A stretch of 19,203 bases of DNA from contig NW_021824301.1 of assembly GCF_006345805.1 (NCBI RefSeq), positions 1 through 19,203 of the forward strand, written 5' to 3'. The position numbers were made by a program, and so were the translations under genes. This document shows, one piece after another, positions 28 to 19,203 of this stretch (the first letter of the stretch is position 1; each line of letters opens with the position of its first letter). Source of the DNA: Octopus sinensis (taxonomy: Eukaryota). Below the pieces are notes generated by a model, which had not been told where the DNA came from, searched no databases, and saw only the letters and a program-made list of their open reading frames with translations.

Positions 28-31
<4 letters not shown>

Positions 32-73
<42 letters not shown>

Positions 74-1360: not shown

Positions 1361-1364
1361 AACG

Positions 1365-2178: not shown

Positions 2179-2269
2179 TTACCGACCAAAGCCTTGTGAG
2201 TGGATTTGGTAGACGGAAACTGAAAGAAGCCCGTCGTATATATATATACATATATGCGTGTGTGTGTTT

Positions 2270-3259: not shown

Positions 3260-4127
3260 ATAATTATATATATATATATATACGCATATTTCTTTACATT
3301 TGTGCATATATATGTATATATGTGCATATACAAATACATATATATATATATATATATATATATTCTGTGTGTGTTTGTTATAAATTTAAAAGTAATATAT
3401 TATACATTATGTTGATGAAGAAGTGAAGACTGGTTAAGATATCAGAAAAAACAACCGAAAAGAAAGAAAAAAATATTGAAATACAATAAAAAGCATTTAT
3501 AAAAAAAAATTACATATGGCGGTGATGAAGAAATATTCTATAACGATTCTTCAAAATGATGTATTTGTTAAGTGAAAGGAGCATTTGGAGTCAAAATGGC
3601 GGACATCTTGAGAGAAATTTTAAATATTAAATACTGGAATTTTTTGCAAAGTATTTTAATGTGAATCTTGAAACAAGTGAAGGTTATTTTTTCCCCCCTT
3701 GAGATTCTTTTAGCCGACATTACTGAGGTCATGCTGCAGCAACACCTACATAAGATGTTGTTGATTTTTCATATCTCCTGTCTATTTTTTCGTGTTTTTT
3801 TTCTTCTTCTCAATTTTATTTCATCATTTAAAAAAAATTTTGTCTTAATTTTTGTTTAGCAATTTTCTGTATTTGCATGAATAATTTTCTTTTGCACATT
3901 TAGTCATCCATCCATCCATCAATCCATCCATTCATACATACATACATATATACATGCGTACGTACATACATATATACATGCGTACGTACATACATATGTA
4001 CATATAAATACATAGATATATATGTGTGTGTGTGTGTATAGTATACATTATAAGCTTGTATATGCATATATACACACACATATATATATATTGTATATAT
4101 GCATACATAGAAAGAAATATATATATG
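3260..4127. repeat. (TA)n block (3260-3362) and CCAT/TACA/TG/TA block (3903-4127)
   Basis: Directly visible. Confidence 0.85.
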
Positions 4128-4137
4128 TGGGAGTGTA

Positions 4138-4266
4138 GACACGTGTCCTAGAGTTTAGGGCGTTGTACTTACGATCGCTGGGTTCGATTCCCGGGGCGTG
4201 CAGAGCCTTGTGTTCTTGAGCAAGCACTTCATTTCACACTGCTCTACTCCATTCAGCTGCAAATGC
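4138..4266 (+). mobile_element. Old tRNA-headed SINE with a CORE-like segment
   Basis: B box gggttcgattcccgg followed by ttgtgttcttgagcaagcacttcatttc, resembling the CORE-SINE motif tgtgaccttgggcaagtcacttaa (recalled). Confidence 0.5.
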
Positions 4267-4424
4267 ATAACGCCGTGATACAATAGTTTTCCGATCAGAC
4301 GAAATGTTGGCCTGCTCTCCTAACCAACAGAATGGCATCGCCCAAAAACCAAAACAACGCGAAACGCCGGGTGGCCAACAATGTGTAACGACATCCGATA
4401 TTCTGGTCGACTCCGTGGTATATA

Positions 4425-4572
4425 CCGTATTTTAACGTATATAAGGAACCCCCTAATTTGGTGGGGCTTGAATTTCGGAAAAAAAGGTTTTGTAAGGGAT
4501 TCCTGTATAAGAAACACCCATATTTTTTAAACCTAATTTTTGACAAAAAATGGTTCCTTATACGCGTTAAAA
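4425..4572. mobile_element. pogo/Tc2-like MITE remnant
   Basis: Inverted repeat ttttaacgtatataaggaacc (4430-4450) vs ggttccttatacgcgttaaaa (4552-4572) matches at 19/21. The left end is ta|CCGTATTTT, typical of Tc2/pogo-type TIRs with a TA target site; the right outermost bases appear lost. Confidence 0.6.
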
Positions 4573-4629
4573 GCTTCTTACCACACAGTCATTCCTGCGC
4601 CTACCCACACAACCACTCCTGTATATATT

Positions 4630-4697
<68 letters not shown>

Positions 4698-4827
4698 CAC
4701 AATCAAGGTGCAAAATGGCGTACTCCGAATGAATAAGGTAGTGTAATCCGATGGTAGAAAGAATTCCACGAATTAGGTACATCAAAGACAGTTAGAAGGA
4801 CAGGGGTTCGTGTGAGCGTGCGGTAAA

Positions 4828-5124
4828 TCTTTATATATAAAAGTGAAGTTGTGTGTCTGTCTCCTACGATTTAGATTCCTAACTACTCCCACATTTTTCG
4901 GTGCAGTTTAACCAAAAGCAGGTATCTTATAGTCGTGATTCATATCGAGCCCTTCTGGGTATTAGCGCGCGTCTATGATGAGTCTACGATTAAAAAAAAA
5001 TTACCATCATTTTCTCCCATTTTTAATGCATTTTTTTGCTATTATATAAGGGAAGTAACTCTCTAGAAATGCTTATATAGTTATTTCCCTTACAAACCCG
5101 AGCAACGCCGGGCGATACTGCTAG
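4828..5124 (+). mobile_element. Non-autonomous Helitron-like element (297 bp)
   Basis: Starts with TC (a^tctttatatataaaag) and ends with CTAG^t, so it sits between host A (4827) and T (5125) with no TSD. The subterminal hairpin cccgagcaacgccggg (5097-5112) lies 8 nt before CTAG. A related copy is at 16369-16877. Confidence 0.8.
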
Positions 5125-5411
5125 TAGTTAATAAAAAAAACAAACGGAGAAAAAAATTCAAGAAGAACAAAACAACAACGCAAGGCCGTGGTACATGAAA
5201 AGAATTAATAAGACACTCAATGAAGGACAGAAAGGGTGTTTTACGTTTCGAGATGACGGTTCCCATTGAAAATAGCATGGACTCGGCTCGAACTGGAAAG
5301 ATTTACTGTTATGAATATCCCCAGGAGGATTCTGAAAACACAAACTGAAAAAGCAGAAGATTATCCAATCGAAGATGGATGCAGGGGGTTCCTTGGAAAC
5401 GTTACGAACAA

Positions 5412-5725
5412 TTTGTTGTTGTTTGTTCCTTCTCAAGCCATGTCTGGCTAATAAGGGCCGGTTTCCCGCGGTTTCCTTGGCGTATAGGTTCCCCACCTGG
5501 ACGGGACGCCGGTCCGTCGGAGGTGAGCTGCTAGGTGCAGGAGGAAAGAGTGAGAGAAAGTTGTGGCAAAAGAGTCAGCAGAAGTTTCGCCATTACTTTC
5601 TGCCGGATCCGCGTAGAGCTTAGGTGTTTTCGCTCATAAACACACACGTCACCCGGTCTGAGATTCGAACCCGCGATCCATCTACCGCGACTCCGCGACT
5701 CTAACCACTACGCCATGTGCCTCCA
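5412..5725 (-). mobile_element. tRNA-derived SINE, 3' tail type A (more diverged copy)
   Basis: Reverse complement starts tggaggcacatggcgtagtggttagagtc and contains ggttcgaatc (B box). It shares ggcgtata, ctggacggga and gagtgagagaaag with 13626-13924. Confidence 0.75.
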
Positions 5726-5822
5726 TTTACGAACAATAAATAATATCCATATTATTTCTCACTTGCAATACAAAACACTAAAAATGATAAGATAAGAAAA
5801 TCAAACGAACAAAAGAATCCGT

Positions 5823-5849
5823 GACAACACCAACAACAACAACACCACC

Positions 5850-5880
<31 letters not shown>

Positions 5881-5910
5881 GCAGCAAAAGCAGCAACAAG
5901 AACAACATGG
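5823..5910. repeat. (AAC)n/(AGC)n array
   Basis: Directly visible. Confidence 0.9.
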
Positions 5911-6195
5911 AAAAAGAAAAGGAAAGAAATTGAAGGAAAATGAGATAAAAACATTTTTGAAATGCTGAATCAGAAATGTGAAATTATTTTAATTGAAACG
6001 CTAATTGTGTCTAATTTATCTGTTCCAGGCAAATATATTAAAGCGATAAAGGAAGTAATCTCTGGAATGGAGGCTTCTAGTATCGATACATAACGATGAG
6101 GGGTGGGTGGGAAACCTGGTAAACAATATTAAATAATGATGACAAGATGTAATGATGACATGGCCGTCAACTCCGTCATCAATCACCTTCACCCC

Positions 6196-6615
6196 CACCA
6201 CCACCACCACCGCTAACAACAACAACAACAGCAACAACAACAACAGAAACAATTATAATGGTGACAATCGTGATGACAATGAGGAAGATGATCTGTTTTT
6301 TTTTTGTTATTATTGGCCTCAAGAGTCAAAGATATTGAGGAATATGTGAAAGGACAGGATACAGCATCATCATCATCATCATCATCATCGTTATCATCAT
6401 CACCTATGATGACAATAATAATAGCAAGAAGAAAAAGGAGGAGGCGGAGGAGGAGGAGGAAGAGGCGAAGAGAGGAAGAAGAAGGAGGAGGAGGAGGGGA
6501 GAAGGAGAAGGATAATAATAATAAGAAGATGAAGAAAATGAAGAAAAAGGAGGATGGGAAGAAAAAGAAGAGGGAGAAGGGAAGAAGAAGAAAAAGAAGG
6601 AGGAGGAGGAGAAGG

Positions 6616-6700
<85 letters not shown>
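6196..6700. repeat. Compound triplet array ACC/AAC, ATC, GGA/GAA, then perfect (ATA)n at 6616-6700
   Basis: Directly visible; source of the poly-R/E/K/I/L ORFs. Confidence 0.95.
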
Positions 6701-6701
<1 letters not shown>

Positions 6702-6760
6702 GATTTCAAAATTTTGCACAAAAAATTTGAAAGCCTGTGTCAGTAATTTTAGGGGTAAAT

Positions 6761-6892
6761 CGATTAAACCAGCGCCCGTGCTTCACTTGTACTTATTTTT
6801 TGGGGACAAAAGGATGAAAGAAAAGTTTGACCTCGGCGTGATTTGAACTCAGAATGGAAAGTAGTTTTTGCGAACGCTCAAACGATTCTGAT
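6761..6892 (-). mobile_element. Degenerate SINE fragment of the 15730/18844 family
   Basis: Reverse complement contains ttctgagttcaaatcacgccgaggtcaaac...ctttcatcctttt...aataagtac. Confidence 0.6.
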
Positions 6893-7099
6893 ATTTGTAA
6901 CGAAGATTGGAATGACGATGAGGAGGAGGAGGAGGAGGTGGGTGGGGGGGGTGTAGGAGTGGGGGGGGGAGGAAGGGGAGGAGCAGAAGAAACAGGAGGC
7001 AGGAGGTGGAACTAAAAGAGATAATGGAGGTAGATGTGGCGCTGGTGGTGACGACGACGAAGATCACGTCGACGGCGACAGCGACGATTATGATGGTGC

Positions 7100-7684
7100 T
7101 CACTCACCATCCTCATCATCGTCACCTACACCACCACCATCACCACCACCTCTAACTACAACAACAAAAACATCATCTTCATCATCATCATCATTATCAT
7201 CACCACCATCGTCATCATCATCATCATCATCATCATCGTCATCATCATCTTCATCATCATCATCTTCATCATCATTATCATCATCTTCATCATCATCATC
7301 AACATCATCATCACCATCGTCATCATCATCGTCATCATCATCATCATATCATCATCACATCATCATCATCCTCATCATCATCATCGCCATCATCATAGAC
7401 ATCGTCATCGTCATTATCCTCATCATCGCCATCGTTGTCGTCGTCTTCATCATCATCAACATCATCATCATCATCATTATCATCATCGCCATCGTCTTCA
7501 TCATCATCATCATATCATCATCATCATCATCGTCGTCATCATCATCATCATAATCATCATCATAACCATCATCATCATAGTCATCATCATCGCCATCGTT
7601 GTCGTCGTCTTCATCATCATCATCATCGGCATCGTTGTCGTCGTCTTCATCATCATCATCACTATCATGATCGCCATCATCATT

Positions 7685-7729
<45 letters not shown>

Positions 7730-7790
7730 GCCATCATCATTATCCTCATCATCATCATCGACATCATCATCACCATCAGCATCACCATCA
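7100..7790. repeat. ~700-bp degenerate (ATC)n array
   Basis: Directly visible; source of the poly-H/S/M/D ORFs. Confidence 0.95.
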
Positions 7791-7917
7791 GCGTCACTGT
7801 CTGCCCAATACAACTTTCGTTTCGTGATATTTTCGATTCTCGAAAAACATGATTTGCTTCCGTTGTCATTCACTTGTTGTCGCTGTTGCTGTTCTTGCAT
7901 CTACCGCCGCCGCTGCC

Positions 7918-7933
7918 ATTATTATTATTATTA

Positions 7934-8011
<78 letters not shown>

Positions 8012-8378
8012 CATCGTTGTTATTACAAAAGTAGTAGTAGTAGTAGTAATAGTAGTAGTAGTAGTAGTGGTTGTTGTTGTTACCGTTGCAGTGGTTTGTT
8101 GTTGTTCTTCTTGTTCTTGTTCTTGTCCTCCTAATTGTTGCTCTCTGGCAGTTGACGCAGCTTTAATTTCACTTCTGCATGTTATCATTTTCGTCAAACG
8201 GCGACATCGCCGACATTATTTGCGCTGTCGTTGATGCAATTTTCACTTCCTCGTCTTGTTGCTGTTGTGGCAGACGATATTTTAGTCACTATTAATATTA
8301 CTATAAAGCTTATTATTATAATTATTATTATCATTATTATTATTATTATTATCATTATTATTATTATTATTATTATTG
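7918..8378. repeat. (ATT)n, (AGT)n and (GTT)n triplet arrays
   Basis: Directly visible. Confidence 0.95.
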
Positions 8379-8749
8379 TTTGTGATTCGGAGTTATTCGC
8401 CTGCAGTTGATGTACTTTCAATTTATCGCTGTTGTTGTCGTGAATGTTATTGCAAATGGTGAGGTTGTTGACGTTGTTGTTGCTGCTGTCTTCTCTTTTA
8501 AATACTTTACACTCGTTACTTATTAATTATAGTTTATTCTTATTAATTATTCACTATTTATAATCAGGTTTTGATTTTCCACTTCAATATTTTTGCCCGA
8601 TTTTGTTTAAAACTTTTCGATTTAAGACTCTGCGTTATTTTTAATACGGACGCTCACACGAACACGCACAGACACTCTCAGACACGCATATACATACACT
8701 CGCTTGAACACACGCGCGTGCCACGGCACACATACAGGTCACATACTAT

Positions 8750-8754
8750 TTACT

Positions 8755-8796
<42 letters not shown>

Positions 8797-8846
8797 ATAT
8801 ATATTATATATATATATATATATATACATATATATATAAATATATA

Positions 8847-8877
<31 letters not shown>

Positions 8878-9154
8878 CATGTGTGTATTATATATATATT
8901 ATATATATATATTATATATATATATATGTATATATGTATGTATGTATAAACATGCATAGATGCAAACACCCACTCACTGAAGTGCATATGTTTACATGTG
9001 CGTGCATGTATGCGTGTATCTATGTGTACATGTATAAATATATATATGTATACATACATAGATGCAGATATATGCTGCGTGTTATTGCTTGTCTCTGTGC
9101 ATGCATGTATATTTGCGTGCACATACGCACGTGTATACAATATATATACAAATA

Positions 9155-9202
<48 letters not shown>

Positions 9203-9249
9203 TATGTATATATATGTATATGTATATATAAGTATATATATACATATAC

Positions 9250-9282
<33 letters not shown>

Positions 9283-9397
9283 ATATATTTCTACACATGC
9301 GCACACATACATGCATACAAACATACATGGATAATTCTGTCTCTCACCACCTTTATATATATGCATGCATGTGTATGTATGTATGTATGTATGTATG

Positions 9398-9428
<31 letters not shown>

Positions 9429-9430
9429 TA
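8750..9430. repeat. (TA)n/(TATG)n microsatellite field
   Basis: Directly visible. Confidence 0.95.
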
Positions 9431-9639
9431 TGAGTACGTGAGTATGTAGAGTGAAAGAGCTAGATGGAGAGAAAGAGAGCTTGAGAGAGAGGGAGGGAGA
9501 GAAAGGGAGATTGACAGACGTAGACAGAGAAAGTGAGATGGAAAATGAGTAGATTTATTGCCTGTTTTAAGAATTATTTTAACATTCTAAATCTGCTAAT
9601 TAGTGCACTAATTAATGACTCTAGATCGGTCTTTCCTCC

Positions 9640-9930
9640 TCCCCCTCCCCCTCCAATTTCTTCTTCTTCTTCTTCTTCTTCTTCTTCTTCTGCTCCTCCT
9701 CTTCTTATTTTGTCTTCGTCATCATCATCATCATCATCATCTTCGTCGTCATCGTCGTCGTCGTCGTCGTCGTCATTGTCATCATCATCATCATCATCAT
9801 CGTCGTCATCGTCATCATCATACGCTTCTTTTTCTTCTTCGTCTTCGTCTCGTCCTTCTCTTCCTTCTCTATTTCATCTTCTTTTCCTTTTCGTCATTAC
9901 CCTTCTCCTCCTCATCATCGTCATCATCTT
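9640..9930. repeat. CCT/TCT/TCA/TCG triplet array
   Basis: Directly visible. Confidence 0.9.
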
Positions 9931-10564
9931 CGTCATCTCTTATTTTTTTCCTTTTTGTCTCGCCCTCTGTCACCCTTTTCTCGCCCCACCAACCACCATT
10001 TTCTCCCTGCATCTATCTCTCAGCTTTCTGTGTTCAGAGAATTGAAAGGTTACGAGAATTGAAAGGTTACAGGGGCCTTCCTCTTTGAAAAGAGCCCTTC
10101 ATCGATTTTTCTCAAGTTTCACATGTGAAGAAAGATAAAAAGGAATAGACGGATGTTGTGCCTTCCAGTGAATTTGCTGAAATGTGGCGAAAATGGCATG
10201 AGGGGACGGTTGGCTCCACTCAATACAAATCTGGAAGTTGGATAGAAAACATTGAGACAGGAACTTGATTTTGGTGTTTAGAGAGATCTTTCAGTGGTAG
10301 GATTCCTCGATTGGCCCCCAGAGGCCTTCTGTTTCAGAAGAGTCACGGTTTTGGTGTTTAGAGAGATCTTTTGTTGTAGAATTGCTCGATACACACACAT
10401 ATACACACACACACAGGCACACACACCTCCTCCTCCTTCTCCTCCTCATCCTCCTCCTCATCATCTTCATCGTTATTGTTACTGTTATTGTATGCTTATG
10501 TTTGTGCGTGGGCTTTATCGTACGTATGTGTGTGTAAGAGTGCGTGTGTATTCGAGTTACCTGC

Positions 10565-10722
10565 ATTGGACTAATGTCATGCTGGAGCAGACCCTTCAAA
10601 TTACTTTTAGTCGATCATATCGACACCAGTATATTTTCAGTTCTGGCCCCTATTTTATCGAACTTTTTTGTCAAACCGCTAAAGTACAGAACATATAGAA
10701 ACGTAACCTAAACACCATCAGT
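10565..10722 (-). mobile_element. Degenerate SINE fragment related to 2270-2478
   Basis: catgctggagca...tatcga...ttttgtcaaaccgctaaag...aaacaccatcagtt matches the reverse complement of 2300-2440 in scattered blocks. Confidence 0.5.
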
Positions 10723-11204
10723 TCTTAGGCTGAGATATTTACCAAATGTCTCTGTTTCAACAAGTTCCTACTTAAATTCAGAAAATTCACACAATAACTA
10801 CACCAGAGGATTAAACAGATTTACATTGAACCTTGGGGATTTACATCAGGCTCCTTTGCCTGCGGGTACTACATCTTTTATTCAACAGGTTATTCCTTAA
10901 AACTAACTCACCTTACGCGAGAATTTCCTGGCACTTGGATTTTCTTCTGTTTAAAGTGGAACATATATTTTATACTACTTCATGATATTTCACTTAGGGC
11001 CCAGTCTGCATAAGCAAAACAACTCAATTACAAATGGGAGCCACGAAGAGATTTATGCTCCTTACATCAGGTCATGTCTGACTGCGTACAGACTATGTGA
11101 GTTCTGCTCAGTATATGAGTTATACATAACACAATATCGTCCGGTGATTTCACAAGAAAATTGCGGAGACATCACGAAGTTTTAAGAAATACAATACATA
11201 CATT

Positions 11205-11437
11205 CGCACATACATACACATCTGTGTATATATCTGTATGTATGTATATTATATATATATATATATTATAATATATATATTATATATATATATTTTGTAT
11301 ATGAGCGTGTGTGAGTATGCGTGTATACACATACATATACTCTACCTATACTGACTACGCTATTTTGATTCCAGTAATTTTTTCTCATTATATAAGTATA
11401 TATGCATACATACATATATACATATAATATATATTAT

Positions 11438-11494
<57 letters not shown>

Positions 11495-11674
11495 TAAGTG
11501 AGATAGAGGTGGATATTAGCTGGAGAGATAGATTGGAAGACATATATATCATATATCATATATATATGTGCATATATATGTATAGGTATGTATAGATATA
11601 TACATATAAATTTACAGAAATTTATATAAATATATATCAATTTATATATGTACATAATAAACATACATATATGC

Positions 11675-11711
<37 letters not shown>

Positions 11712-11830
11712 GGGAGAGAGAGAGAGGGGGTGGGGAGTAAATTTTTAAGTAGGTAGATAGATAAACATAAATAAAACTCACTTCCTAGATCCTTTTATCC
11801 CATTCACCACACACACACACACACACTTCC
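11205..11830. repeat. (TA)n/(TACA)n/(GA)n/(CA)n field
   Basis: Directly visible. Confidence 0.9.
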
Positions 11831-11849
11831 AGACGAAGACGCCACTCCA

Positions 11850-12046
11850 CCACACGCCACCACAACCGACACCCTTTCCGCTGGGCAATGCCAATCTACA
11901 ATAATTACAATTAGTTAAAGGCCATTATACGTCAGGTAACGCATTAGCAAATATGTCTCCGCCGTTTCATTCTCTCTAACGCTTCGGCGCCATTTTGGCT
12001 GACGCGCTCTACACGTATTGGCGTAATCGTTCATACGAGGTAAGGT
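11850..12046 (+). promoter_or_regulatory. Candidate promoter / non-coding first exon
   Basis: A CpG-containing unique island between microsatellite blocks. It has CCAAT (11891-11895), CRE-like TACGTCA (11928-11934), YY1-type CGCCATTTT (11988-11996), and two adjacent donors GAG|GTAAGG (12040) and AAG|GTGAGG (12045). Motif-level evidence only. Confidence 0.4.
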
Positions 12047-12459
12047 GAGGTTCGTTGGCTGGTTTGTTCGATGGATGTGTTGCTCTCCTTGCTGTTACTG
12101 TTGCTGCTGTGCTTTATGTATTCATTTATTTATTTATTTGTTATTTTTTAAGTGGGGTTTCATTGGATATGAGTGAGTGAGTTGGTACGTGTGTGTGTGT
12201 GACGGGATCGTCGTGGTGGTGTTTTTTTTTGTCTTGTTATCGTGTGTGTTTAGCAAAGTATGTTATTTGGTGGTTCTGTCTGCGAGCAATAATTATAATT
12301 AATATGTACACTGTAGCCGCCATCATCGCCGCCAACAACGATTTGACAAAACTTAGGAAATTCCAAAATATCCGTCTCCCAGCGCCCAGACATATACTCA
12401 CACACTCACAAACACAAATAAAAAACATGCACAAACTTTATCGCGTTCACACGTATACA

Positions 12460-12585
12460 TGTGTGTGTGTGTAATATATATACATATGTATATATGTTAT
12501 AATGTATGTCTATATATATATATTGTATATATATATATATATTATATATATTATATATATATGTATATATATATATATATAGATG

Positions 12586-12616
<31 letters not shown>

Positions 12617-12667
12617 TATATATTGTATAATATATATATATATATATATATATACACATCTATCTAC

Positions 12668-12714
<47 letters not shown>

Positions 12715-12718
12715 ACTG

Positions 12719-12749
<31 letters not shown>

Positions 12750-13032
12750 TATATATATATACCAGATATATCTAGGTATTTATATACACAAATGCTTCAA
12801 CCGCCTCTGGTATTATGTTTATGTTGGGTGTTTATAAATGTGCCTGTCCGTCTGTTTGTCTATCTATCCTTCTAGCTATTCATCTTGCCTTGCACACACA
12901 TACACTCACACACACAGGCACACACACACTCATATATAAATAGATATGAACATGTATATATACACATACACATAATTAATGATAAAGATGGAATATATGT
13001 GAATATCTATGTATATGTATGCATTTGTATGT

Positions 13033-13076
<44 letters not shown>

Positions 13077-13135
13077 ATATACAAATATATTTAGAAAAGG
13101 TTCAAATCGGGCAGACTGCGATTAACACATACATA
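12460..13135. repeat. (TA)n/(TATC)n/(CA)n/(TG)n field
   Basis: Directly visible. Confidence 0.9.
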
Positions 13136-13442
13136 TACGGATTTAATTAAAATAAAATAAGACTTCAATTACATATTGATTATATTAGAAATATTTAAAA
13201 AAATAGAAATATAAAAGTATATGAATACTAAAAATATACATGCAGATATAGATATATAGATATGTAAACATAATAATAATAATAATAATAATGATAGAAT
13301 ATAGATAAAAATAATGAAATATTGAAAAATTACATTTTTAAAAAATTTTAAATATGATATAGAGTAAATAATAGGCATTAAAACGAGTTTTGGGTAACAC
13401 GTTAGAGGAAAGTAAGGTGTTCCAACGATCGTTTCAGGAGTA

Positions 13443-13443
<1 letters not shown>

Positions 13444-13502
<59 letters not shown>

Positions 13503-13509
13503 CATCATT

Positions 13510-13573
<64 letters not shown>

Positions 13574-13602
13574 TATTATTATATTATTATTATTATTATT
13601 AT
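13444..13602. repeat. (ATT)n-(ATC)n-(ATT)n array
   Basis: Directly visible. Confidence 0.95.
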
Positions 13603-13625
13603 GATTACATATCTATATATCTATA

Positions 13626-13924
13626 TTTTTTATTTATGCACCCTTTTCAAACCTAGCCAGGCTCATGGGCCCGGTTTCCCGGTTTCTCTGGCGTATGCGT
13701 TCCCCACAGCTGGACGGGAAGCCAGTCCATCGTACCGTTACTCAAGGAACAGGAAGAAAGAGTGAGAGAAAGATGGGCGAAATAGTACAACAGGGGTCAC
13801 CTCCAACCCCTGCCGGAGCCTCGTGGAACTTTCGCTCAATAAACTCACACGACGCCCGGTCTGGGAATCGAAATATTCCGACCGCGAGTCCGCTGCCCCA
13901 ACCACTGGGCCATTGTGCCTCCAC
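13626..13924 (-). mobile_element. tRNA-derived SINE, 3' tail type A
   Basis: Reverse complement starts gtggaggcacaatggcccagtggttggggcagcggactcgcgg. The tail contains gatggactggcttcccgtccag (resembles the V-SINE domain as recalled) and gaaaccgggaaaccgggccc, then an A-rich end. Confidence 0.8.
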
Positions 13925-14177
13925 ATATATCTATATGTCCATGTATATTTTTAGTAATCATATATTTTTATATTTTTATATTTCTAATGTATAAATATAT
14001 GTTTCAGATTGGACAAGTCTTGTTCTATCTTAACTAAACCCGTATATATATGTGTTAATCGACGTCTGCCTGATTTGAACCTTTTTCTATTATGTCTATT
14101 ATATTTGTCTAGCGCCTCGGGTTCGACTTGAGCACCTCTACGCTACCTATGTTTTTCGAAACAAAATTATGATTTTT

Positions 14178-14316
14178 ATATATATATATATATATTTATA
14201 TCTATCTATCTATCTATGTATCTACGCAAGTATGTATGTATGTATGTATGTATGTATGTATGTATGTATGTTATGATGTATGTATGTATGTATGCATGTA
14301 TATGTATGTATGCCTA

Positions 14317-14401
<85 letters not shown>

Positions 14402-14530
14402 ATATATAGATATATATATATATATCTATATATATATATATATATATAATATAATATATATATGCAAGGAAAGATGACTAGATAGATAGATAGATAGATA
14501 GATAGATTGATTGATTGACTGATTGACAGG
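14178..14530. repeat. (TA)n/(TATG)n/(TATC)n/(GATA)n field
   Basis: Directly visible. Confidence 0.95.
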
Positions 14531-14738
14531 TAGACTGAGAGAGATAGAGATTCATACTGTCTGACGAACGCTAGCGGACCGAAACTTTGAAGTCATAGTC
14601 ACCCTCTTCTTGTAATATTTTAATAAACATGTGGTTTACTAAAATGTATTGAGTAAATTTTGGATTTAATTTTAATTGTAAATTGTTTTATATCTAGCAC
14701 GACAAAACCAAACATATATATGCTCATTTCTTTTGCAG

Positions 14739-14785
14739 ACATGTGACAGCTACAGAAGTCCTTCAACTGATGAAGTTGAGCAGAC
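14739..14785 (+). other. Candidate 47-nt non-coding (5' UTR) micro-exon of the NOS gene
   Basis: Acceptor ctcatttcttttgcag ends at 14738 and donor GTGAGT is at 14786-14791. Both are near consensus, 47 nt apart, on the NOS strand and in non-repetitive sequence. Confidence 0.6.
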
Positions 14786-15025
14786 GTGAGTCCTTATTGT
14801 TATTTTTCTCTCCCTTAAAACCATACAAAATACAAATCGAATTTTACATCGCCAGCCCATTTCGCATTACCACCTATCTTTAACTAACAGCGAAGCTACA
14901 CCTCCACGTCACCTTACAACACAGCTCTACTTAACGTTTTATCCATCAGCTACTCAGTGACACGATGGCCTACGGATTGAGCGAATACAGCTCTCTGGCT
15001 TTCTGTATCTATCTCCAGGGATGTA

Positions 15026-15408
15026 GTGGAGGCGCAATGGCCCAGTGGTTAGGGCAGCGGACTCGCGGTCATAGGTTCGCGGTTTCGATTCCCAGACCGG
15101 GCGTTGTGAGTGTTTATTGAGTGAAAACACCTAAAAGCTCCACGAGGCTCCGGCAGGGGATGGTGGTGATCCCTGCTGTACTCTTTCACCACAACTTTCT
15201 CACTCTTACTTCCTGTTTCTGTTGTACCTGTACTTCAAAGGGCCGGCCTTGTCACTCTCTGTGTCACGCTGAATATCCCCGAAAACTACGTTAAGGGTAA
15301 CGTGTCTGTGGAGTGCTCAGCCACTTACACGTTAATTTCACGAGCAGGCTGTTCCGTTGATTCAGATCAACCGGAACCCTCATCGTCGTAACCGACGGAG
15401 TGCTTCCA
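15026..15408 (+). mobile_element. tRNA-derived SINE, full length, 3' tail type B
   Basis: Head gtggaggcgcaatggcccagtggttagggcagcggactc carries an A-box (TGGCCCAGTGG) and a B-box-like GGTTTCGATTCCC. 15026-15217 matches the elements at 13626-13924 and 5412-5725, and the 3' end matches the reverse complement of 19153-19203. Confidence 0.8.
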
Positions 15409-15729
15409 CCAGTGATGTATTGCGATCACCAGTAATGACCTATCGATCACGGTTCAATATTTATGGGCACAAATAGAATGTAATTGCTACAAGGCAGTTG
15501 ATTCTATCAGGCTGAGTAAAAAGTAAGCAATGTTTTGAACCATGAAGAATTTGTACCGGATTTTTGCAAAGTGCTGAATATTTTAAAACATTTTTTGCAA
15601 TTGTCTAATAATACAGAATTAGGCTCACCCAAATGCATCAATAAATTAACATTCTTCACCCTGGTGGCAAATAAATAAAATCATTATAATTGTTGTTGCT
15701 ACTGCTGCTGCTGTTGTTGTTGTTATCGA

Positions 15730-16126
15730 GGCGGCGAGCTGGCACAATCGTTAGCACGCCGGGCGAAATGCTTAGCAGTAGTTCGTCTGCCGCTACGTTC
15801 TGAGTTCGAATTCCGCCGAGGTCGACTTTGCCTTTCATCCTTTCGGGGTCGATAAATTAAGTACCAGTTACGCACTGGGGTCGATATAATCGACTTAATC
15901 CGTTTGTCTGTCCTTGTTTGTCCCCTCTGTGTTTAGCCCCTTGTGGGTAGTAAAGAAATAGGTATTTCGTCTGCTGCTACGTTCTGAGTTCGAATTCCGC
16001 CGAGGTCGACTTTGCCGTAACGCACTGGGGTCGATGTAATCGACTTAATCCGTTTGTCTGTCCTTGTTTGTCCCCACTATGTTTAGAGGGTAATAGCCCC
16101 TTGTGGGTAATAAAGAAATAGGTATT
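15730..16126 (+). mobile_element. tRNA-related SINE with a Meta-domain-like core, plus a tandem partial second unit
   Basis: Unit 1 (15730-15966) reads ggcgagctggcacaatcgttagcac...gactttgcctttcatcctttcggggtcgataaattaagtacc...gtaaagaaataggtatt. Unit 2 (15961-16126) repeats from ggtatttcgtctgc but lacks the tttcatcc...gtaccagt core. The Meta-domain assignment is from memory. Confidence 0.75.
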
Positions 16127-16368
16127 GTTGTTTTAAAGGATTTAAACCGTTTCCTCCCTCTCCCTTCCCGTCGCCTGCATCTTGTTTGTTCACATCTCAC
16201 GTTTGATGGCATTACAACACTTCCGTTACAGCCTTCTTCCCTTTTTCCTCATCCTCCTCCTGCTCCTCCTCCTCACCTTCCTTCATCTCAAGTTTCTTGG
16301 TCCCTTAGTACTCTCCACAACGTCTTTTCACGACGTTTAGGTCCTCGTTCTTTTTAAATTATCTTTCA

Positions 16369-16877
16369 CTAGCAGTATCGCCCGGCGTTGCTCGGATTTG
16401 TAAGGGAAATATAAGCATTTTTAGAGAGTTACTTCTCTTATAGATGCCAATTCGGGCTTTCTTAGCCATTTCTGTTTTTGTGTCTTCAAACCATGAAGTC
16501 CTTGTTCTAAAAGAATGCTGGTCTCCTTGACAACGCTTTACGACGTTAATTTCCTTACACTCCCTTCCCCACAGCTTCACGAGGGAGGGAAGAAGGGGGA
16601 GAAGCAAACAGGTGCTGGTGTGACCATGGACGCCAACTCCGCCGCCATCGACACACGAAAAATTATGCATTAAAATGGAATAAAAAATATGTGTTAAATT
16701 ATTTTTAAAATCGTAGGCTCATCGTAGACGCGTGCTAATACTCAGACGGGCTCGATATGAATCACGACTATAAGATACCCGAATTTGGTTAAACTGCACC
16801 GCAAAATGTGGGGAGGAGATTAGAATCTAAATCGAAGGGGACAGACCCAACACAACTAGAGTTTTATATATATAAGA
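16369..16877 (-). mobile_element. Non-autonomous Helitron-like element (509 bp), same family as 4828-5124 with an extra internal segment
   Basis: On the minus strand it begins A^TC at 16877 and ends CTAG^T at 16369. It has the same hairpin (cccggcgttgctcgg, 16381-16395) and shared blocks such as gggctcgatatgaatcacgactataagatacc and ttggttaaactgcaccg. Confidence 0.8.
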
Positions 16878-16904
16878 TTTCATGACGTTGATTATCACAT
16901 CTAC

Positions 16905-17035
16905 ACCCGTTCTTTCTTTCTTGTACTCTTTTTTTTCCTTTTTTCACTCATTCACTCATTCTCTTTTTCCTTCCTTCCTTCCTTCATTCGTTCGTTCGTT
17001 CTTTCATTATTTTCTTTCTTTCTTTTCAGGTATGT
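16905..17035 (+). other. Long polypyrimidine tract with 3' splice acceptor (AG 17028-17029) immediately followed by a donor-like GTATGT
   Basis: A ~120-nt C/T-rich tract ends ttttctttctttcttttcag|GTATGTAA, about 400 nt upstream of the NOS ATG. Confidence 0.6.
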
Positions 17036-17084
17036 AACCGGTGGAAAAAGGTAGCCGGATGTTGATTATACGACGAAGAAAAAA

Positions 17085-17265
17085 ACACGCGCACACACAC
17101 GCACACACATACACTTCCAAGAGTACTGACAAAATAATATAATATTATATATATATACACATATATATATATATATACATATTTATATTTTCTTCATATA
17201 TATATATATACGTTCCTGTATGTCACAAAATATCAAAATTCCCATAAAATTTTGTTTTTTAAACG

Positions 17266-17318
<53 letters not shown>
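17085..17318. repeat. (CA)n, (TA)n and (AAT)17 repeats just upstream of the NOS ATG
   Basis: Directly visible; (AAT)17 at 17268-17318. Confidence 0.9.
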
Positions 17319-17430
17319 TTGAAGCACCCGCTAACTTGGATGTTTAGAAGTTGTAAGGTGTAAAAGAAACAAGGAAAACCAAGCGATTCAACCTCCCATA
17401 TAGGCCTGAGAACAAAGACAGTTTTTTAAA

Positions 17431-18660
17431 ATGTCTTACATACCTAATACACTTTTAGTGAAAGTTAAAAAATCCCACGACCTGGGTCTCGGGTTCGCGG
17501 TTAACGAAAGACCTTCAAAACCCCATGTGATGATTAGCGAGGTCTTTCTTAATGGACCGGCCAAAGAAACTGGACAGATCTACGTCGGTGACTCAATTCT
17601 GCGAATCAATGATACTGACGTTAGTGACATGAATTTCGACCAAGTGGCCGACATTCTGAAGAACGTAGTCGTGGACGAAACCGTGACGTTATTTTTGAAA
17701 GGTCCTGAAGGCAGCATGACGCATTTAGAGACCATATTTCTGGATAATGGAACCCCTCGTACCATGCGAGTGACAAAACCGATCCCTAATGAATCGTTTG
17801 TCAACAGATTAAAGCGGACGTTCGGTCCATCTGTTCCGTCGGCAGTGAACCCTATTCGACGGTTTTATCACATGGACTCTGGAAAGACTAAGAAAAACAA
17901 TGCGTCCCCTAAAAAGGAACCGTTTTTTCCCAACGATAAAACATCGTCTCTGACGTCGTCGACGTCGTCCTCGTCAACGACCCCGAAAAGAAAGACACAG
18001 TCGTTTTCGGACGGCTCAGATATCATTCGAAACGGTTCGCTCCCTGTAGATTGTCCGGATCGTTCGGACGTGAACTGCCAGACGCGCAAGAATATTGTCA
18101 ACACTGCACCAAACCCCGCTAACGCCGTCAAAGAGACTGTCTTGGAAGATAGTAGAAACGGGTCTCCAAAGATCACTTTGACCGCTGTACAGAGTGTTCC
18201 TGGAGATCCGAATTCCACTAACTTACAGAACCAGATATCTGGAGATCGCGGTATCGGAGGCGGTGGTGGCGGTGGCGATGGTGGCGGTGGTGTTAGAGGT
18301 GTCCGTAGCGACGGTTATGGGGATTATGATGTGATAGTGATCAAACAGGAACAAAACCAGATCAAAGTGATAATGGCGAACGAAGACGGCGGCAGCGTGT
18401 CGGAAACGATAAGGGACGACAAGAGCAACACGAACGCGGTGATTGGGGACGAAAAGAAAACTGCCGCCGTGAACGACGTCGTCAACGGAACGCCAACTAA
18501 AAGCAGGTCTCGCAGCGGCAGCAGACACAACCTGTACTGCGAGAACACTGGTCGAGGGTCACCGGAACGCAGAGGGTCGAGCCCCGTGAAATACTGCAAA
18601 CTGAAGTGTTACCAAACTGAGAAAGTGACCACGGATATGTTGCACTTGAAAAGTGTTGAG
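17431..18660 (+). CDS. NOS1: First coding exon (410 codons) of a PDZ-containing neuronal-type nitric oxide synthase; gene continues beyond the window
   Basis: Residues 6-117 align without gaps, at an offset of +8, to the mammalian nNOS N-terminus as I recall it: LGLGFAVNERPSKPHV vs GGLGFLVKERVSKPPV, GDSILRIN vs GDIILAVN, GPEGSMTHLETIFLDNGTPRTMRVTKP vs GPEGFTTHLETTFTGDGTPKTIRVTQP. The end, KLKCYQTEKVTTDMLHLKS, matches the NOS oxygenase N-terminus KVKNWETEVVLTDTLHLKS. The ATG is in an AAAATG context with an in-frame TGA upstream at 17407-17409. The exon ends GAG|GTAAGA (donor 18661, phase 0); the ORF-track extension to 18726 is intronic read-through. Confidence 0.93.
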
Positions 18661-18666
18661 GTAAGA
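18661..18666 (+). other. 5' splice donor ending the NOS PDZ exon
   Basis: GAG|GTAAGA lies exactly where NOS homology stops, followed by T-rich and GT-repeat intronic sequence. The expected next motif (zinc-binding CxxxxC-GSIM) is not seen in 18661-19203. Confidence 0.88.
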
Positions 18667-18843
18667 TTAATTTTTTATAAAAAACATTCTCTCTGTTTTT
18701 TTCTTTCTTTTCTATTTCATATATGAGTGTGTGTGAGAGTGCGAAGGTGTGTGGTGTGTGTGTTGTGTGTGTGCATGGGGGGAGGGGGTATGTGTGTGTG
18801 GAGGTAGTACACGAGGGTGTGTATATACGTGTGTGTGCATGTT

Positions 18844-19066
18844 AGCTGGCAGAAACGGTAGCACGCCGGGCGAAATGCTTAGCGGTATTTTGTCTGCCGC
18901 TGCGTTCTGAGTTCAAATTCCGCCGAGGTTGACTTTGCCTTTCATCCTTTCGGGGTCGATTTAATAAGTACCATTTATGCACTGGGGTCGATATAATCGA
19001 CTTAATCCCTTTGTCTGTCCTTGTTTGTCCTCTCTGTGTGTAGCCCCTTGTGGGTAGTAAAGAAAT
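18844..19066 (+). mobile_element. SINE of the same family as 15730-15966, in the intron after the PDZ exon
   Basis: Near-identical to 15736-15960: agctggcagaaacggtagcacgccgggcgaaatgcttagc...gactttgcctttcatcctttcggggtcgat...agccccttgtgggtagtaaagaaata. Confidence 0.8.
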
Positions 19067-19152
19067 AAAATAGATAGACAGACAAGCAGAAAGACAGACA
19101 GATAGAGAGATGGATAGATGGATAGTAGAGACATAGATAGACTATACATATA

Positions 19153-19203
19153 GTGGCACTCCGTCAGTTACGACGACGATGGTTCCAGTTGATCCGCTCA
19201 ACG
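19153..19203 (-). mobile_element. 3' end of a tail-type-B SINE, cut by the window edge
   Basis: gcactccgtcagttacgacgacgatggttccagttgatc is the reverse complement of gatcaaccggaaccctcatcgtcgtaaccgacggagtgc (15365-15403) with a few mismatches. Confidence 0.7.

What the first reader, a model, noticed from the sequence alone, without database searches (positions are those of the whole stretch)
17431..17781. Invertebrate (probably cephalopod) NOS with a full vertebrate-nNOS-type PDZ plus beta-finger module
Seen: the PDZ and the downstream hairpin align without gaps to mammalian nNOS at offset +8. The internal PDZ ligand ETIF (res 100-103, nt 17728-17739) corresponds to ETTF 108-111. D54 and R113 correspond to the D62-R121 salt bridge that stabilises the beta-finger. 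Known: in vertebrates this finger docks into PSD-95 PDZ2 and syntrophin, coupling NOS to NMDA receptors and the dystrophin complex; many invertebrate NOS proteins (e.g. Drosophila) lack a PDZ, although PDZ-bearing NOS is known in some molluscs. Inference: this animal may have a PSD-95/Dlg- or syntrophin-anchored synaptic NOS, which is relevant to NO-dependent plasticity described in octopus learning.
Basis: partly seen in the sequence, partly recalled or inferred. Interest (0 to 1): 0.72.

Follow-up and report, generated by a model that had tools for sequence, protein, structure and literature searches.

The report
First exon of PDZ-bearing NOS gene
This is the large first coding exon of a neuronal-type nitric oxide synthase gene from a mollusc-like (probably octopus) genome, carrying an intact PDZ domain and "beta-finger" docking hairpin; this module proves to be old and widespread among animals, so the gene is ordinary, though it updates the published view that cephalopod NOS lacks a PDZ.

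Summary
Window 17431-17781 encodes a PDZ domain plus a C-terminal hairpin that aligns without gaps to mammalian nNOS residues 13-127 (offset +8; 50/115 identical, next-best offset 16/115). A confident AlphaFold model (pLDDT 89.9) superposes on the nNOS PDZ/beta-finger crystal structures, finger included. The flagged span is only the first 117 codons of a 410-codon exon (17431-18660). That exon starts at an ATG preceded by an in-frame stop, ends at a GTAAGA donor, and is under strong purifying selection (dN/dS 0.06). Its last 24 codons are the NOS-specific lead-in to the oxygenase domain. In limpet (Patella) NOS the same junction runs straight into the catalytic domain. The catalytic exons themselves lie outside the window. 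The module is not vertebrate-specific. About 50 diverse representatives keep the finger signature (L99, R113 52/52; T101 50/52; F103 46/52), among them named gastropod, bivalve and coral NOS. An oyster NOS-PSD-95 interaction is already published. One deviation is Phe69 in place of nNOS Tyr77 in the peptide groove. Cephalopod origin is plausible but could not be verified. Verdict: a correct annotation, a new member of a known kind, of low to moderate interest.

The parts
17407..17409 (+). In-frame TGA stop 8 codons upstream of the start codon; closes the reading frame upstream
   Evidence: Read directly. L001 also has an in-frame stop 11 codons upstream of its ATG.
17431..18660 (+). First coding exon (410 codons) of a PDZ-bearing, neuronal-type NOS gene
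   Evidence: ORF; nNOS is the best PDB match; dN/dS 0.064 at dS 0.42 against the orthologous exon in L002; about 30 homologous genomic first exons end at the same junction.
17449..17700 (+). PDZ core, residues 7-90
   Evidence: Pfam PF00595 E=6.9e-12. AF2 strands 7-13, 22-26, 33-38, 55-59, 84-90 and helices 43-47, 69-77, pLDDT >95.
17482..17496 (+). Carboxylate-binding loop LGLGF (residues 18-22)
   Evidence: Read directly. G21 is invariant and GLGF is the majority in the family alignment.
17590..17592 (+). D54, equivalent of nNOS Asp62 (salt-bridge partner of the finger arginine)
   Evidence: Offset +8 alignment. D in 50/50 aligned NOS-type PDZs, but also in 128/150 hits that include non-NOS PDZs, so not diagnostic on its own.
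17635..17637 (+). F69, equivalent of nNOS Tyr77 (first turn of helix alphaB, peptide-groove specificity position); deviates from the family
   Evidence: Tyr in 48 of 58 family members, including P0002 and tetrapod nNOS. Phe in the window, in P0001 and in two other members.
17701..17781 (+). Beta-finger, residues 91-117 (GPEGSMTHLETIFLDNGTPRTMRVTKP)
   Evidence: AF2 hairpin, strands 95-103 and 109-117, pLDDT about 89-96. Superposes on 1qau, 1qav_B and 4hop_B/D over 112-118 columns. 67% identical to tetrapod nNOS against 37% for the PDZ core.
17728..17739 (+). Internal pseudo-C-terminal ligand ETIF (residues 100-103), equivalent of nNOS ETTF 108-111
   Evidence: Read directly. In 52 representatives: E100 39, T101 50, F103 46.
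17767..17769 (+). R113, equivalent of nNOS Arg121
   Evidence: Arg in 52/52 representatives; invariant in A3.
17782..18495 (+). Low-complexity linker, residues 118-355 (Ser/Thr run 172-184, Gly run 274-287), with two conserved short motifs
   Evidence: Translation. Still under purifying selection against L002 (dN/dS 0.074). No DNA-level similarity to L001 in this part.
18160..18183 (+). Conserved linker motif GSPKITLT (residues 244-251)
   Evidence: SPKI(x)(L/V)T recurs in about half of 29 more distant invertebrate PDZ-NOS first exons. Function unknown.
18334..18381 (+). Conserved linker motif IVIKQEQNQIKVIMAN (residues 302-317)
   Evidence: MAFFT aligns it with IEIxQ(D/E)x(D/E)xIxV(V/I)VKGD of other invertebrate NOS and with vertebrate R(R/K)DAE(I/V)QVDR. 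The possible equivalence to the nNOS dynein-light-chain (PIN/LC8) site rests on memory and was not tested.
18496..18660 (+). Conserved exon end, residues 356-410: KSRSRSGSRH, SPERRGSSP, and the NOS-specific lead-in KYCKLKCYQTEKVTTDMLHLKSVE
   Evidence: Matches nNOS 283-321 collinearly (profile domain i-E 1.7, conditional E 1e-5). DNA-level similarity to L001 returns here (18484-18673). dN/dS 0.017. Same motif and junction as Patella NOS.
18661..18666 (+). 5' splice donor GTAAGA (phase-0 intron after codon 410)
   Evidence: Read directly. L001 and L002 have GAG|GTAAG at the same codon. The frame closes 21 codons into the intron.

Best explanation
Window 17431-18660 (+) is the first coding exon of a neuronal-type (NOS1-like) nitric oxide synthase gene of an invertebrate. 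The animal is most likely a mollusc and plausibly an octopod. The exon encodes, in order: a PDZ domain (residues 7-90); the 27-residue beta-finger hairpin (91-117); a long, mostly disordered linker with a few conserved short motifs; and the first residues of the lead-in to the oxygenase domain. It then splices, through a phase-0 GTAAGA donor, to catalytic exons beyond the window. Shown here: the sequence, the predicted fold, the exon boundaries, purifying selection, and the fact that the same N-terminal exon is joined to NOS oxygenase and reductase domains in limpet, mussel, coral and fish proteins. Inferred by analogy with rat nNOS (structures 1QAU and 1QAV; knowledge of Hillier 1999 and Tochio 2000): the hairpin is held against the PDZ core by the D54-R113 salt bridge. 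It presents T101 and F103 of ETIF as a pseudo-C-terminal peptide (positions -2 and 0) to the groove of a partner PDZ, either Dlg/PSD-95 PDZ2 or syntrophin. The NOS PDZ's own groove stays free for a second, C-terminal ligand. The effect would be to place a Ca2+/calmodulin-dependent NOS next to a membrane Ca2+ source. The module is ancestral to cnidarians plus bilaterians rather than a vertebrate invention. My probabilities: about 0.95 that this is a functional NOS first exon with an intact PDZ/beta-finger, and about 0.6 that the finger really docks into Dlg or syntrophin PDZs in this animal. The overall confidence given is a compromise between the two.
For: Identity with nNOS: the six best PDB sequence hits are all nNOS, ungapped at 5-119 to 13-127; 50/115 identical at offset +8 against 16/115 at the best other offset. 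Fold: AF2 on a 41-sequence alignment gives pLDDT 89.9 with a hairpin at 95-103/109-117. The four best Foldseek hits are the nNOS PDZ/finger chains 4hop_B/D, 1qav_B and 1qau (target TM 0.89-0.94, rmsd 1.3-2.4 A, 112-118 columns, E 1e-12 to 4e-11), whereas ordinary PDZs align over about 90 columns at E >= 5e-6. NOS membership: the exon end matches nNOS 283-321 collinearly. In Patella vulgata 'nitric oxide synthase, brain' XP_050408838.1 (PDZ + NO_synthase + flavodoxin + FAD + NAD) the sequence '...DVLHHKSAE' continues as 'PTQCTPERCMGS...' into the oxygenase exactly where this exon ends ('...DMLHLKSVE|gtaaga'). About 30 genomic first-exon ORFs end at the same place. Function retained: dN/dS 0.064 overall, 0.071 in the finger and 0.017 in the exon end, at dS 0.42; start context, upstream stop and donor are conserved in two relatives. 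Finger conservation in 52 representatives that are at most 50% identical to each other: L99 52, T101 50, F103 46, G107 51, R113 52. The finger is 67% identical to tetrapod nNOS against 37% for the PDZ core. Coral NOS P0195 has LETVF...RTVR. Precedent for the partner: oyster NOS is reported to interact with oyster PSD-95 (Jiang 2016, as cited in PMC7686737).
Against: No NOS catalytic exon is in the window, which ends 543 nt after the donor. None lies within 10 kb downstream in the relative's contig L001. No transcript evidence for the splice was obtainable. The source organism could not be named. The only cloned cephalopod NOS (Sepia officinalis) is described as lacking a PDZ (PMC4663546), so the exon might be used only in some isoforms. 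F69 replaces the Tyr found in 48/58 family members at the groove specificity position, so ligand preference of the NOS PDZ's own groove may differ from nNOS. The D54-R113 contact could not be measured because model coordinates are not exposed. D54 is also common in non-NOS PDZs. Octopus vertical-lobe LTP is NOS-dependent but NMDA-independent, so the classical NMDA receptor-PSD-95-NOS arrangement is not implied.
Confidence: 0.8

Rival explanations
1. The exon is real and belongs to the NOS gene, but it is an alternatively used 5' exon, as exon 2 is in mammalian NOS1 (the nNOS-beta and -gamma isoforms lack it). The main NOS transcript in most tissues of this animal would then lack the PDZ, and the PDZ form would be confined to particular cells.
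For: The cloned Sepia officinalis NOS cDNAs are reported to lack a PDZ (PMC4663546). Yet the more distant relative P0002, which shares the linker Gly run and the exon end with the window and so may be another cephalopod, keeps a complete PDZ/finger exon. Mammalian precedent is from my own knowledge.
Against: Strong purifying selection on the whole exon shows it is used, but says nothing about how often. No expression data were available. The Sepia clones could simply be 5'-incomplete.
Confidence: 0.3
2. The PDZ/finger is intact, but in this lineage it does not dock into Dlg/PSD-95 or syntrophin. It would target NOS through other partners, using its own peptide groove with an altered specificity, or through other PDZ proteins or vesicle and axolemma association.
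For: F69 replaces the family's Tyr at the position that, in nNOS, selects acidic residues at ligand position -2 (role of Tyr77 from my knowledge of Stricker 1997). Octopus vertical-lobe LTP is NMDA-independent. In the gastropod Stramonita the PDZ was invoked for vesicle and axolemma association, and no muscle labelling was seen (PMC4663546).
Against: The residues that contact the partner PDZ in the nNOS-syntrophin structure (T at -2, F at 0, the hairpin scaffold, R113) are all conserved here and are nearly invariant family-wide, which argues for a conserved partner surface. An oyster NOS-PSD-95 interaction is reported.
Confidence: 0.25
3. The exon is not part of a working NOS gene. It would be a pseudogene remnant, or a PDZ exon captured by another gene.
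For: Only that the catalytic exons are not visible in the window or in the 10 kb downstream of the relative's exon.
Against: dN/dS 0.064 with dS 0.42, and every indel in frame across 410 codons. Start context and GTAAG donor are conserved in three genomes. The exon end is the NOS-specific lead-in and has the lowest dN/dS, 0.017. Long introns are normal for a genome this rich in repeats.
Confidence: 0.03

Closest known systems
Rat/human nNOS (NOS1) PDZ domain with beta-finger (PDB 1QAU, 1QAV chain B, 4HOP, 1B8Q)
   Same: Ungapped alignment over 115 residues (43.5% identity; 67% in the finger). Same GLGF loop, same E-T-x-F pseudo-ligand, same Asp/Arg pair, same predicted fold (target TM 0.89-0.94). 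Same position at the extreme N-terminus of the protein.
   Different: The N-terminus is 8 residues shorter. Phe69 replaces Tyr77 in the peptide groove, and Ile replaces Thr at ligand position -1. The linker is unrelated in sequence except for short motifs. The whole region up to the oxygenase lead-in is one exon here, whereas vertebrate genomic ORFs of this family (P0045, P0061) stop at about residue 240, near '...QVDR', which suggests an extra intron in vertebrates.
Patella vulgata 'nitric oxide synthase, brain' XP_050408838.1 (P0005), with other molluscan PDZ-NOS (Lottia, Lehmannia, Stramonita, Crepidula, Chlamys, Potamilus)
   Same: Closest named full-length relative: PDZ 44% and finger 67% identical. 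It shares the linker motifs GSPKI-L- and IEI-QD-DEI-V-VKGD and the same junction into the oxygenase domain. The literature already describes a PDZ in these molluscan NOS proteins (PMC4663546, PMC7926364, PMC3724850).
   Different: The window's protein and its two close relatives carry lineage-specific Ser/Thr and Gly runs and an RS-rich block. Only the first exon is available here.
Crassostrea gigas NOS-PSD-95 interaction (Jiang et al. 2016, FASEB J 30:3527, as cited in PMC7686737)
   Same: A molluscan PDZ-bearing NOS reported to bind the species' own PSD-95.
   Different: A different class (bivalve) in an immune-cell context. I could not read the primary paper, and nothing equivalent is shown for this animal.
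Sepia officinalis NOS (Scheinker et al. 2005; AAS93626/AAS93627)
   Same: The only cloned cephalopod NOS; neuronal-type, with the autoinhibitory loop.
   Different: Described as lacking the PDZ domain (PMC4663546, citing Andreakis 2011). If the window is cephalopod, its gene does have the PDZ exon. I could not retrieve the Sepia sequence to compare N-termini.

Membership tests
nNOS-type PDZ + beta-finger module | PDZ fold with GLGF-type carboxylate-binding loop at the protein's N-terminus | tested here: met
   Pfam PF00595 E=6.9e-12; LGLGF at residues 18-22; confident AF2 PDZ fold.
nNOS-type PDZ + beta-finger module | A C-terminal extension of about 30 residues forming a two-stranded beta-hairpin packed on the PDZ | tested here: met
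   AF2 strands 95-103 and 109-117, pLDDT about 89-96. Foldseek aligns 112-118 columns to 1qau, 1qav_B and 4hop_B/D at target TM 0.89-0.94, against about 90 columns for ordinary PDZs. This is a prediction, not an experimental structure.
nNOS-type PDZ + beta-finger module | Internal pseudo-peptide E-T-x-F on the first finger strand (Thr at -2, Phe at 0) | tested here: met
   ETIF at residues 100-103, nt 17728-17739. T101 in 50/52 and F103 in 46/52 of the family.
nNOS-type PDZ + beta-finger module | Asp62-Arg121 salt bridge that pre-forms the finger | tested here: inconclusive
   Both residues are present (D54, R113). R113 is 52/52 and D54 50/50 in the family. The contact could not be measured because no coordinates are exposed, and D54 is also common in non-NOS PDZs.
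nNOS-type PDZ + beta-finger module | Tyr at the alphaB specificity position (nNOS Tyr77) of the PDZ's own peptide groove | tested here: not met
   Phe69 in the window and in P0001; Tyr in 48/58 members. The hydroxyl is lost but the aromatic ring is kept. This bears on ligand preference, not on the finger.
nNOS-type PDZ + beta-finger module | Binding of the finger to PSD-95/Dlg PDZ2 or syntrophin PDZ | not testable with these tools
   Needs binding assays or complex modelling with the species' partner PDZs, which are not in the window.
Nitric oxide synthase (animal, three-domain NOS) | [quoted passage not shown] | not testable with these tools
   Not in the window, which ends 543 nt after the donor. 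Not within 10 kb downstream in L001.
Nitric oxide synthase (animal, three-domain NOS) | NOS-specific N-terminal lead-in to the oxygenase ('K-[FY]-x-K-[LIV]-[KR]-...-D-x-L-H-x-K') in the right order after the PDZ | tested here: met
   KYCKLKCYQTEKVTTDMLHLKSVE at residues 387-410. Collinear second match to nNOS 283-321. Same motif in Patella, fish and about 30 genomic homologues.
Nitric oxide synthase (animal, three-domain NOS) | Splicing of this exon to the catalytic exons | tested here: inconclusive
   A canonical, conserved phase-0 donor is present, and full-length homologues are continuous across the same junction. No transcript from this species was available.
Nitric oxide synthase (animal, three-domain NOS) | Reductase domains (flavodoxin, FAD, NAD) and calmodulin site | not testable with these tools
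   Outside the window.

The most novel reading that the evidence does not exclude
The beta-finger, and with it PDZ-PDZ docking of NOS onto Dlg- or syntrophin-type scaffolds, dates back at least to the cnidarian-bilaterian ancestor and is the most constrained part of the NOS N-terminus. Cephalopods retain it, so the textbook statement that cephalopod NOS lacks a PDZ reflects a 5'-truncated clone or an alternative-first-exon isoform. In octopus, the PDZ form would anchor NOS postsynaptically in the amacrine neurons of the vertical lobe, next to a Ca2+ source other than NMDA receptors, and so provide the scaffold for the NO-dependent LTP 'switch'. The Tyr-to-Phe change in the groove would retune the second ligand.
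Probability: 0.3. Interest if true: 0.5.

Novelty: new member of a known kind. Interest (0 to 1): 0.25.

Why it matters
PDZ-bearing NOS is already documented in gastropods, bivalves, placozoans, corals, sponges and chordates, and an oyster NOS-PSD-95 interaction has been reported. What this locus adds is modest but concrete. If the source is a cephalopod, it shows that the lineage with the best-studied NO-dependent learning circuit among invertebrates has a NOS gene with a fully intact scaffold-docking module under strong constraint. That runs against the repeated statement, based on Sepia cDNAs, that cephalopod NOS lacks a PDZ. It also gives defined residues (T101, F103, R113, D54, F69) for testing how NOS is positioned at octopus synapses, where LTP is NOS-dependent but NMDA-independent. 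The family-wide comparison made here shows the finger to be better conserved than the PDZ core from coral to mammal, which supports an ancient origin for this unusual PDZ-PDZ docking mode.

Tried and rejected
1. Naming the source organism. The window's ORF is not on record in the contig index. The relatives' sample accessions (SRR11869394, ERZ21867824) appear in no searchable paper. No cephalopod-named NOS appeared among the 120 listed hits of the oxygenase probe.

2. Finding the catalytic exons. They are not in the window, and no NOS-like open frame lies in the 10 kb downstream of the exon in L001.

3. Finding a full-length octopus NOS containing this exon. Searches returned none. The index evidently does not return proteins longer than about 940 aa, since Patella P0005 was not returned for a probe containing 480 of its own residues. 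The absence is therefore uninformative.

4. A 125-residue query to the search for homologous proteins returned nothing, not even the 96%-identical P0001. I treat this as a tool limitation.

5. The first AlphaFold run, on a 3-sequence alignment, was unusable (pLDDT 45.5) and was discarded in favour of the 41-sequence run.

6. tRNA and Rfam scans of the window were negative. Four non-repetitive upstream ORFs have no Pfam match.

7. Measuring the D54-R113 distance in the model was impossible because coordinates are not exposed.

8. Pseudogene or exon capture was considered and rejected on dN/dS and boundary conservation.

9. Mattiello 2010 (Sepia glutamate/NO) could not be read.
Full report
**What is at the coordinates.** The flagged span 17431-17781 is the start of a 431-codon open frame (17431..18726, + strand). 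The rest of the 19.2 kb window is microsatellite- and SINE-rich non-coding DNA: 59 tandem-repeat rows, no credible ORF upstream, no Pfam match for four non-repetitive ORFs, and no tRNA or Rfam hit. The translated frame has a Pfam PDZ domain (PF00595, E=6.9e-12, residues 10-85).

**The match to nNOS.** Against all PDB chain sequences, the six best matches are all neuronal NOS (8t1j, 1b8q, 1qav_B, 4hop_B, 9whc, 1qau; E 2e-28 to 2e-25). They align without a single gap, residues 5-119 to nNOS 13-127. The next hit, PSD-95, scores 1e-13 and covers only residues 17-89. Ungapped identity at offset +8 to a tetrapod nNOS is 50/115, and the best of all other offsets is 16/115. ETIF is residues 100-103 (nt 17728-17739), D54 is 17590-17592 and R113 is 17767-17769.

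**Fold.**
- A first AlphaFold run on three sequences was unusable (pLDDT 45.5).
- With a 41-sequence alignment of NOS-type N-termini (A3), the model is confident (mean pLDDT 89.9).
- It shows a PDZ fold followed by a hairpin, with strands 95-103 and 109-117 and a turn at 104-108.
- The four best Foldseek matches in the PDB are the nNOS PDZ/beta-finger chains 4hop_B, 1qav_B, 4hop_D and 1qau: target TM 0.89-0.94, rmsd 1.3-2.4 A, 112-118 aligned columns, E 1e-12 to 4e-11.
- Ordinary PDZ domains follow at E >= 5e-6 with about 90 aligned columns, so they lack the finger.
- Model coordinates are not exposed, so I could not measure the D54-R113 contact.

**True extent and exon boundaries.**
- The coding unit is larger than flagged. 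The ATG at 17431 has an AAA context and an in-frame TGA 8 codons upstream (17407-17409).
- The frame runs 410 codons to GAG at 18658-18660, followed by GTAAGA. It closes 21 codons into the presumed intron.
- Two relatives were found: P0001 (92% identical; genomic Logan contig L002) and P0002 (47% identical; a 132-kb ENA contig, L001).
- Both have the same start context and the same GAG|GTAAG donor at the same codon. L001 also has an in-frame stop close upstream.
- Against L002 the upstream flank is 75% identical with indels, while the exon is 88% identical with only in-frame indels.
- Nei-Gojobori dN/dS against L002 is 0.064 at dS 0.42. By segment it is 0.064 (PDZ), 0.071 (finger), 0.074 (linker) and 0.017 (exon end).
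- Against the distant L001, DNA similarity survives only at 17428-17780 (PDZ plus finger) and 18484-18673 (exon end).
- This is a functional coding exon, not a relic.

**Is it NOS?** The catalytic exons are not in the window, which ends 543 nt after the donor. None is visible in the 10 kb downstream of the homologous exon in L001. The case rests on three points.
1. The PDZ/finger is specifically nNOS-like (above).
2. The exon's last residues, KYCKLKCYQTEKVTTDMLHLKSVE, match nNOS 283-321 collinearly. The match is weak alone (profile domain i-E 1.7, conditional 1e-5).
3. A profile search of 1.84 billion representatives found about 50 proteins with the same N-terminal architecture. These include full-length or spliced NOS proteins:
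   - P0005 is 'nitric oxide synthase, brain [Patella vulgata]' XP_050408838.1, with PDZ + NO_synthase + flavodoxin + FAD + NAD.
   - P0065 and P0044 are from the mussel Potamilus.
   - P0068 has the full nNOS domain set (PDZ, NO_synthase, flavodoxin, FAD, NAD) and an N-terminus close to the named fish (Megalops) NOS P0156.
   - P0084 is a further example.

In Patella, '...DVLHHKSAE' continues directly as 'PTQCTPERCMGS...' into the oxygenase domain, exactly where this exon ends. About 30 genomic first-exon ORFs of about 400 aa end '...LH-K--E' and then read 'V(S/R)' through a GT donor. I put the probability that this is the first coding exon of a working NOS gene at about 0.95.

**How special is the finger?**

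| Window residue | Conserved in the 52 representatives (each ≤50% identical to the others) |
|---|---|
| L99 | 52 |
| E100 | 39 |
| T101 | 50 |
| F103 | 46 (the rest Leu or Tyr) |
| G107 | 51 |
| R113 | 52 |
| D54 | 50 of 50 aligned |

. D54 is also Asp in 128 of 150 hits that include unrelated PDZs, so it is not diagnostic.

The finger is consistently better conserved than the PDZ core:

| Compared with | Finger (91-117) | PDZ core (5-90) |
|---|---|---|
| Tetrapod nNOS (P0155) | 67% | 37% |
| Patella NOS (P0005) | 67% | 44% |

. A coral NOS (Acropora, P0195; PDZ + NO_synthase) has LETVF...RTVR. 'Vertebrate-nNOS-type' is therefore a misnomer: the PDZ/finger module is ancestral and widely retained.

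**What the literature says.**
- A PDZ is already reported in NOS of Lottia, Lehmannia, Stramonita, Chlamys and Crepidula (PMC4663546, PMC3724850, PMC7926364).
- It is also reported in placozoans, a coral and sponges (PMC7400543).
- Oyster NOS is reported to bind oyster PSD-95 (Jiang 2016, cited in PMC7686737).

**One real deviation.** The residue equivalent to nNOS Tyr77 is Phe69 in the window and in P0001, but Tyr in 48 of 58 family members, including P0002. This is the first-turn position of helix alphaB which, from my knowledge of Stricker et al. 1997, sets the preference for acidic residues at ligand position -2. It concerns the NOS PDZ's own groove, not the finger.

**Mechanism (inferred).** By analogy with the nNOS-syntrophin and nNOS-PSD-95 work (1QAV; Tochio 2000), the hairpin is pre-formed against the PDZ through the Asp54-Arg113 pair. 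It inserts T101 and F103 as a pseudo-C-terminus into a partner PDZ groove (Dlg PDZ2 or syntrophin). The NOS groove remains free for a second ligand. This would place a Ca2+/calmodulin-dependent enzyme next to a Ca2+ entry site. All partner-contacting residues are conserved, and a molluscan precedent exists, so I put this at about 0.6.

The specific link to NMDA receptors is not supported for the octopus vertical lobe. LTP there is NOS-dependent but NMDA-independent (bioRxiv 10.1101/2024.12.25.630295), and NOS activity sits in amacrine neurites (PMC9303212).

**Taxon.** The nearest named relatives are molluscan. The window, P0001 and P0002 share lineage-specific features absent from other molluscs: a Gly run in the linker and the block KSRSRSGSRH...SPERRGSSP. 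The repeat landscape and the tRNA-derived SINE copies resemble octopus genomes as I remember them, but no tool could name the organism. 'Cephalopod' remains plausible and unverified.

If it is right, the locus contradicts the statement that cephalopod NOS lacks a PDZ, which rests on Sepia cDNAs (PMC4663546). The likely reconciliation is a 5'-incomplete clone or an alternative first exon, as with mammalian nNOS-beta and -gamma.

**Verdict.** This is a correct and well-supported annotation of an ordinary, conserved gene feature: a new member of a known kind. Interest is low to moderate (0.25). Its value lies in giving octopus neurobiology a defined docking module to test, and in showing that the beta-finger is the most conserved part of an ancient NOS N-terminus.

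Noticed in passing
window 15737-15960 and 18844-19067 (plus partial units at 15962-16086): Two direct copies (92% identical over 224 nt) of a tRNA-derived SINE-like repeat flank the NOS exon region, with extra partial units next to the first copy. ARAGORN and Rfam call no tRNA there.
   Followed up: partly
window ~15020-15410 and ~19150-19203: A second SINE-like element. By eye, its 3' part (...ccgttgattcagatcaaccggaaccctcatcgtcgtaaccgacggagtgc...) recurs in inverted orientation at the very end of the window. It was not picked up by the repeat finder at the settings used.
   Followed up: no
window 1-17400: The 17 kb upstream of the exon is extremely rich in microsatellites (CAT x207 at 7171-7790, CATC x151 at 760-1361, long TA/AT runs). 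It has no credible ORF and no Pfam match. An (AAT)17 run at 17268-17318, 113 nt upstream of the ATG, is also present at the same place in the relative L002.
   Followed up: partly
window 17635-17637 (residue F69): The peptide-groove specificity position (nNOS Tyr77) is Phe in this species and in the 92%-identical relative, but Tyr in 48/58 family members. This is a possible lineage-specific change in the ligand preference of the NOS PDZ's own groove.
   Followed up: partly
window 18160-18183 (residues 244-251, GSPKITLT): A short linear motif, SPKI-x-(L/V)-T, inside the otherwise unalignable linker. It recurs in about half of the more distant invertebrate PDZ-NOS first exons. Function unknown.
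   Followed up: partly
window 18334-18381 (residues 302-317, IVIKQEQNQIKVIMAN): A linker block conserved in many invertebrate NOS as IEIxQ(D/E)x(D/E)xIxV(V/I)VKGD. MAFFT aligns it with vertebrate nNOS '...R(R/K)DAE(I/V)QVDR', the region I recall as the PIN/LC8 (dynein light chain) binding site. P0002 has I-Q-V there and the window has I-K-V. Possibly an ancient LC8 site; not tested.
   Followed up: no
window 18499-18585 (residues 357-385): An RS-rich block, KSRSRSGSRH, and SPERRGSSP lie just before the oxygenase lead-in. An R-R-x-S/T...SPKK(F/Y) pattern recurs in many invertebrate homologues (for example SDRRGS..SPKKY) and looks like a conserved basophilic-kinase phosphorylation site. This segment has the lowest dN/dS of the exon (0.017).
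   Followed up: no
P0045 and P0061 (vertebrate genomic ORFs) versus the window exon: Vertebrate first-coding-exon ORFs of this family stop at about residue 240, near '...QVDR/QVAW'. The invertebrate exon runs on to the '...LHLKS-E' junction. This suggests that vertebrates gained, or invertebrates lost, an intron within the linker.
   Followed up: no
tool behaviour: the search for homologous proteins returned no protein longer than about 940 aa, even for a probe containing 480 residues of the 1565-aa P0005. It also returned nothing for a 125-aa query that is 96% identical to P0001. Negative results from it should not be read as absence.
   Followed up: partly
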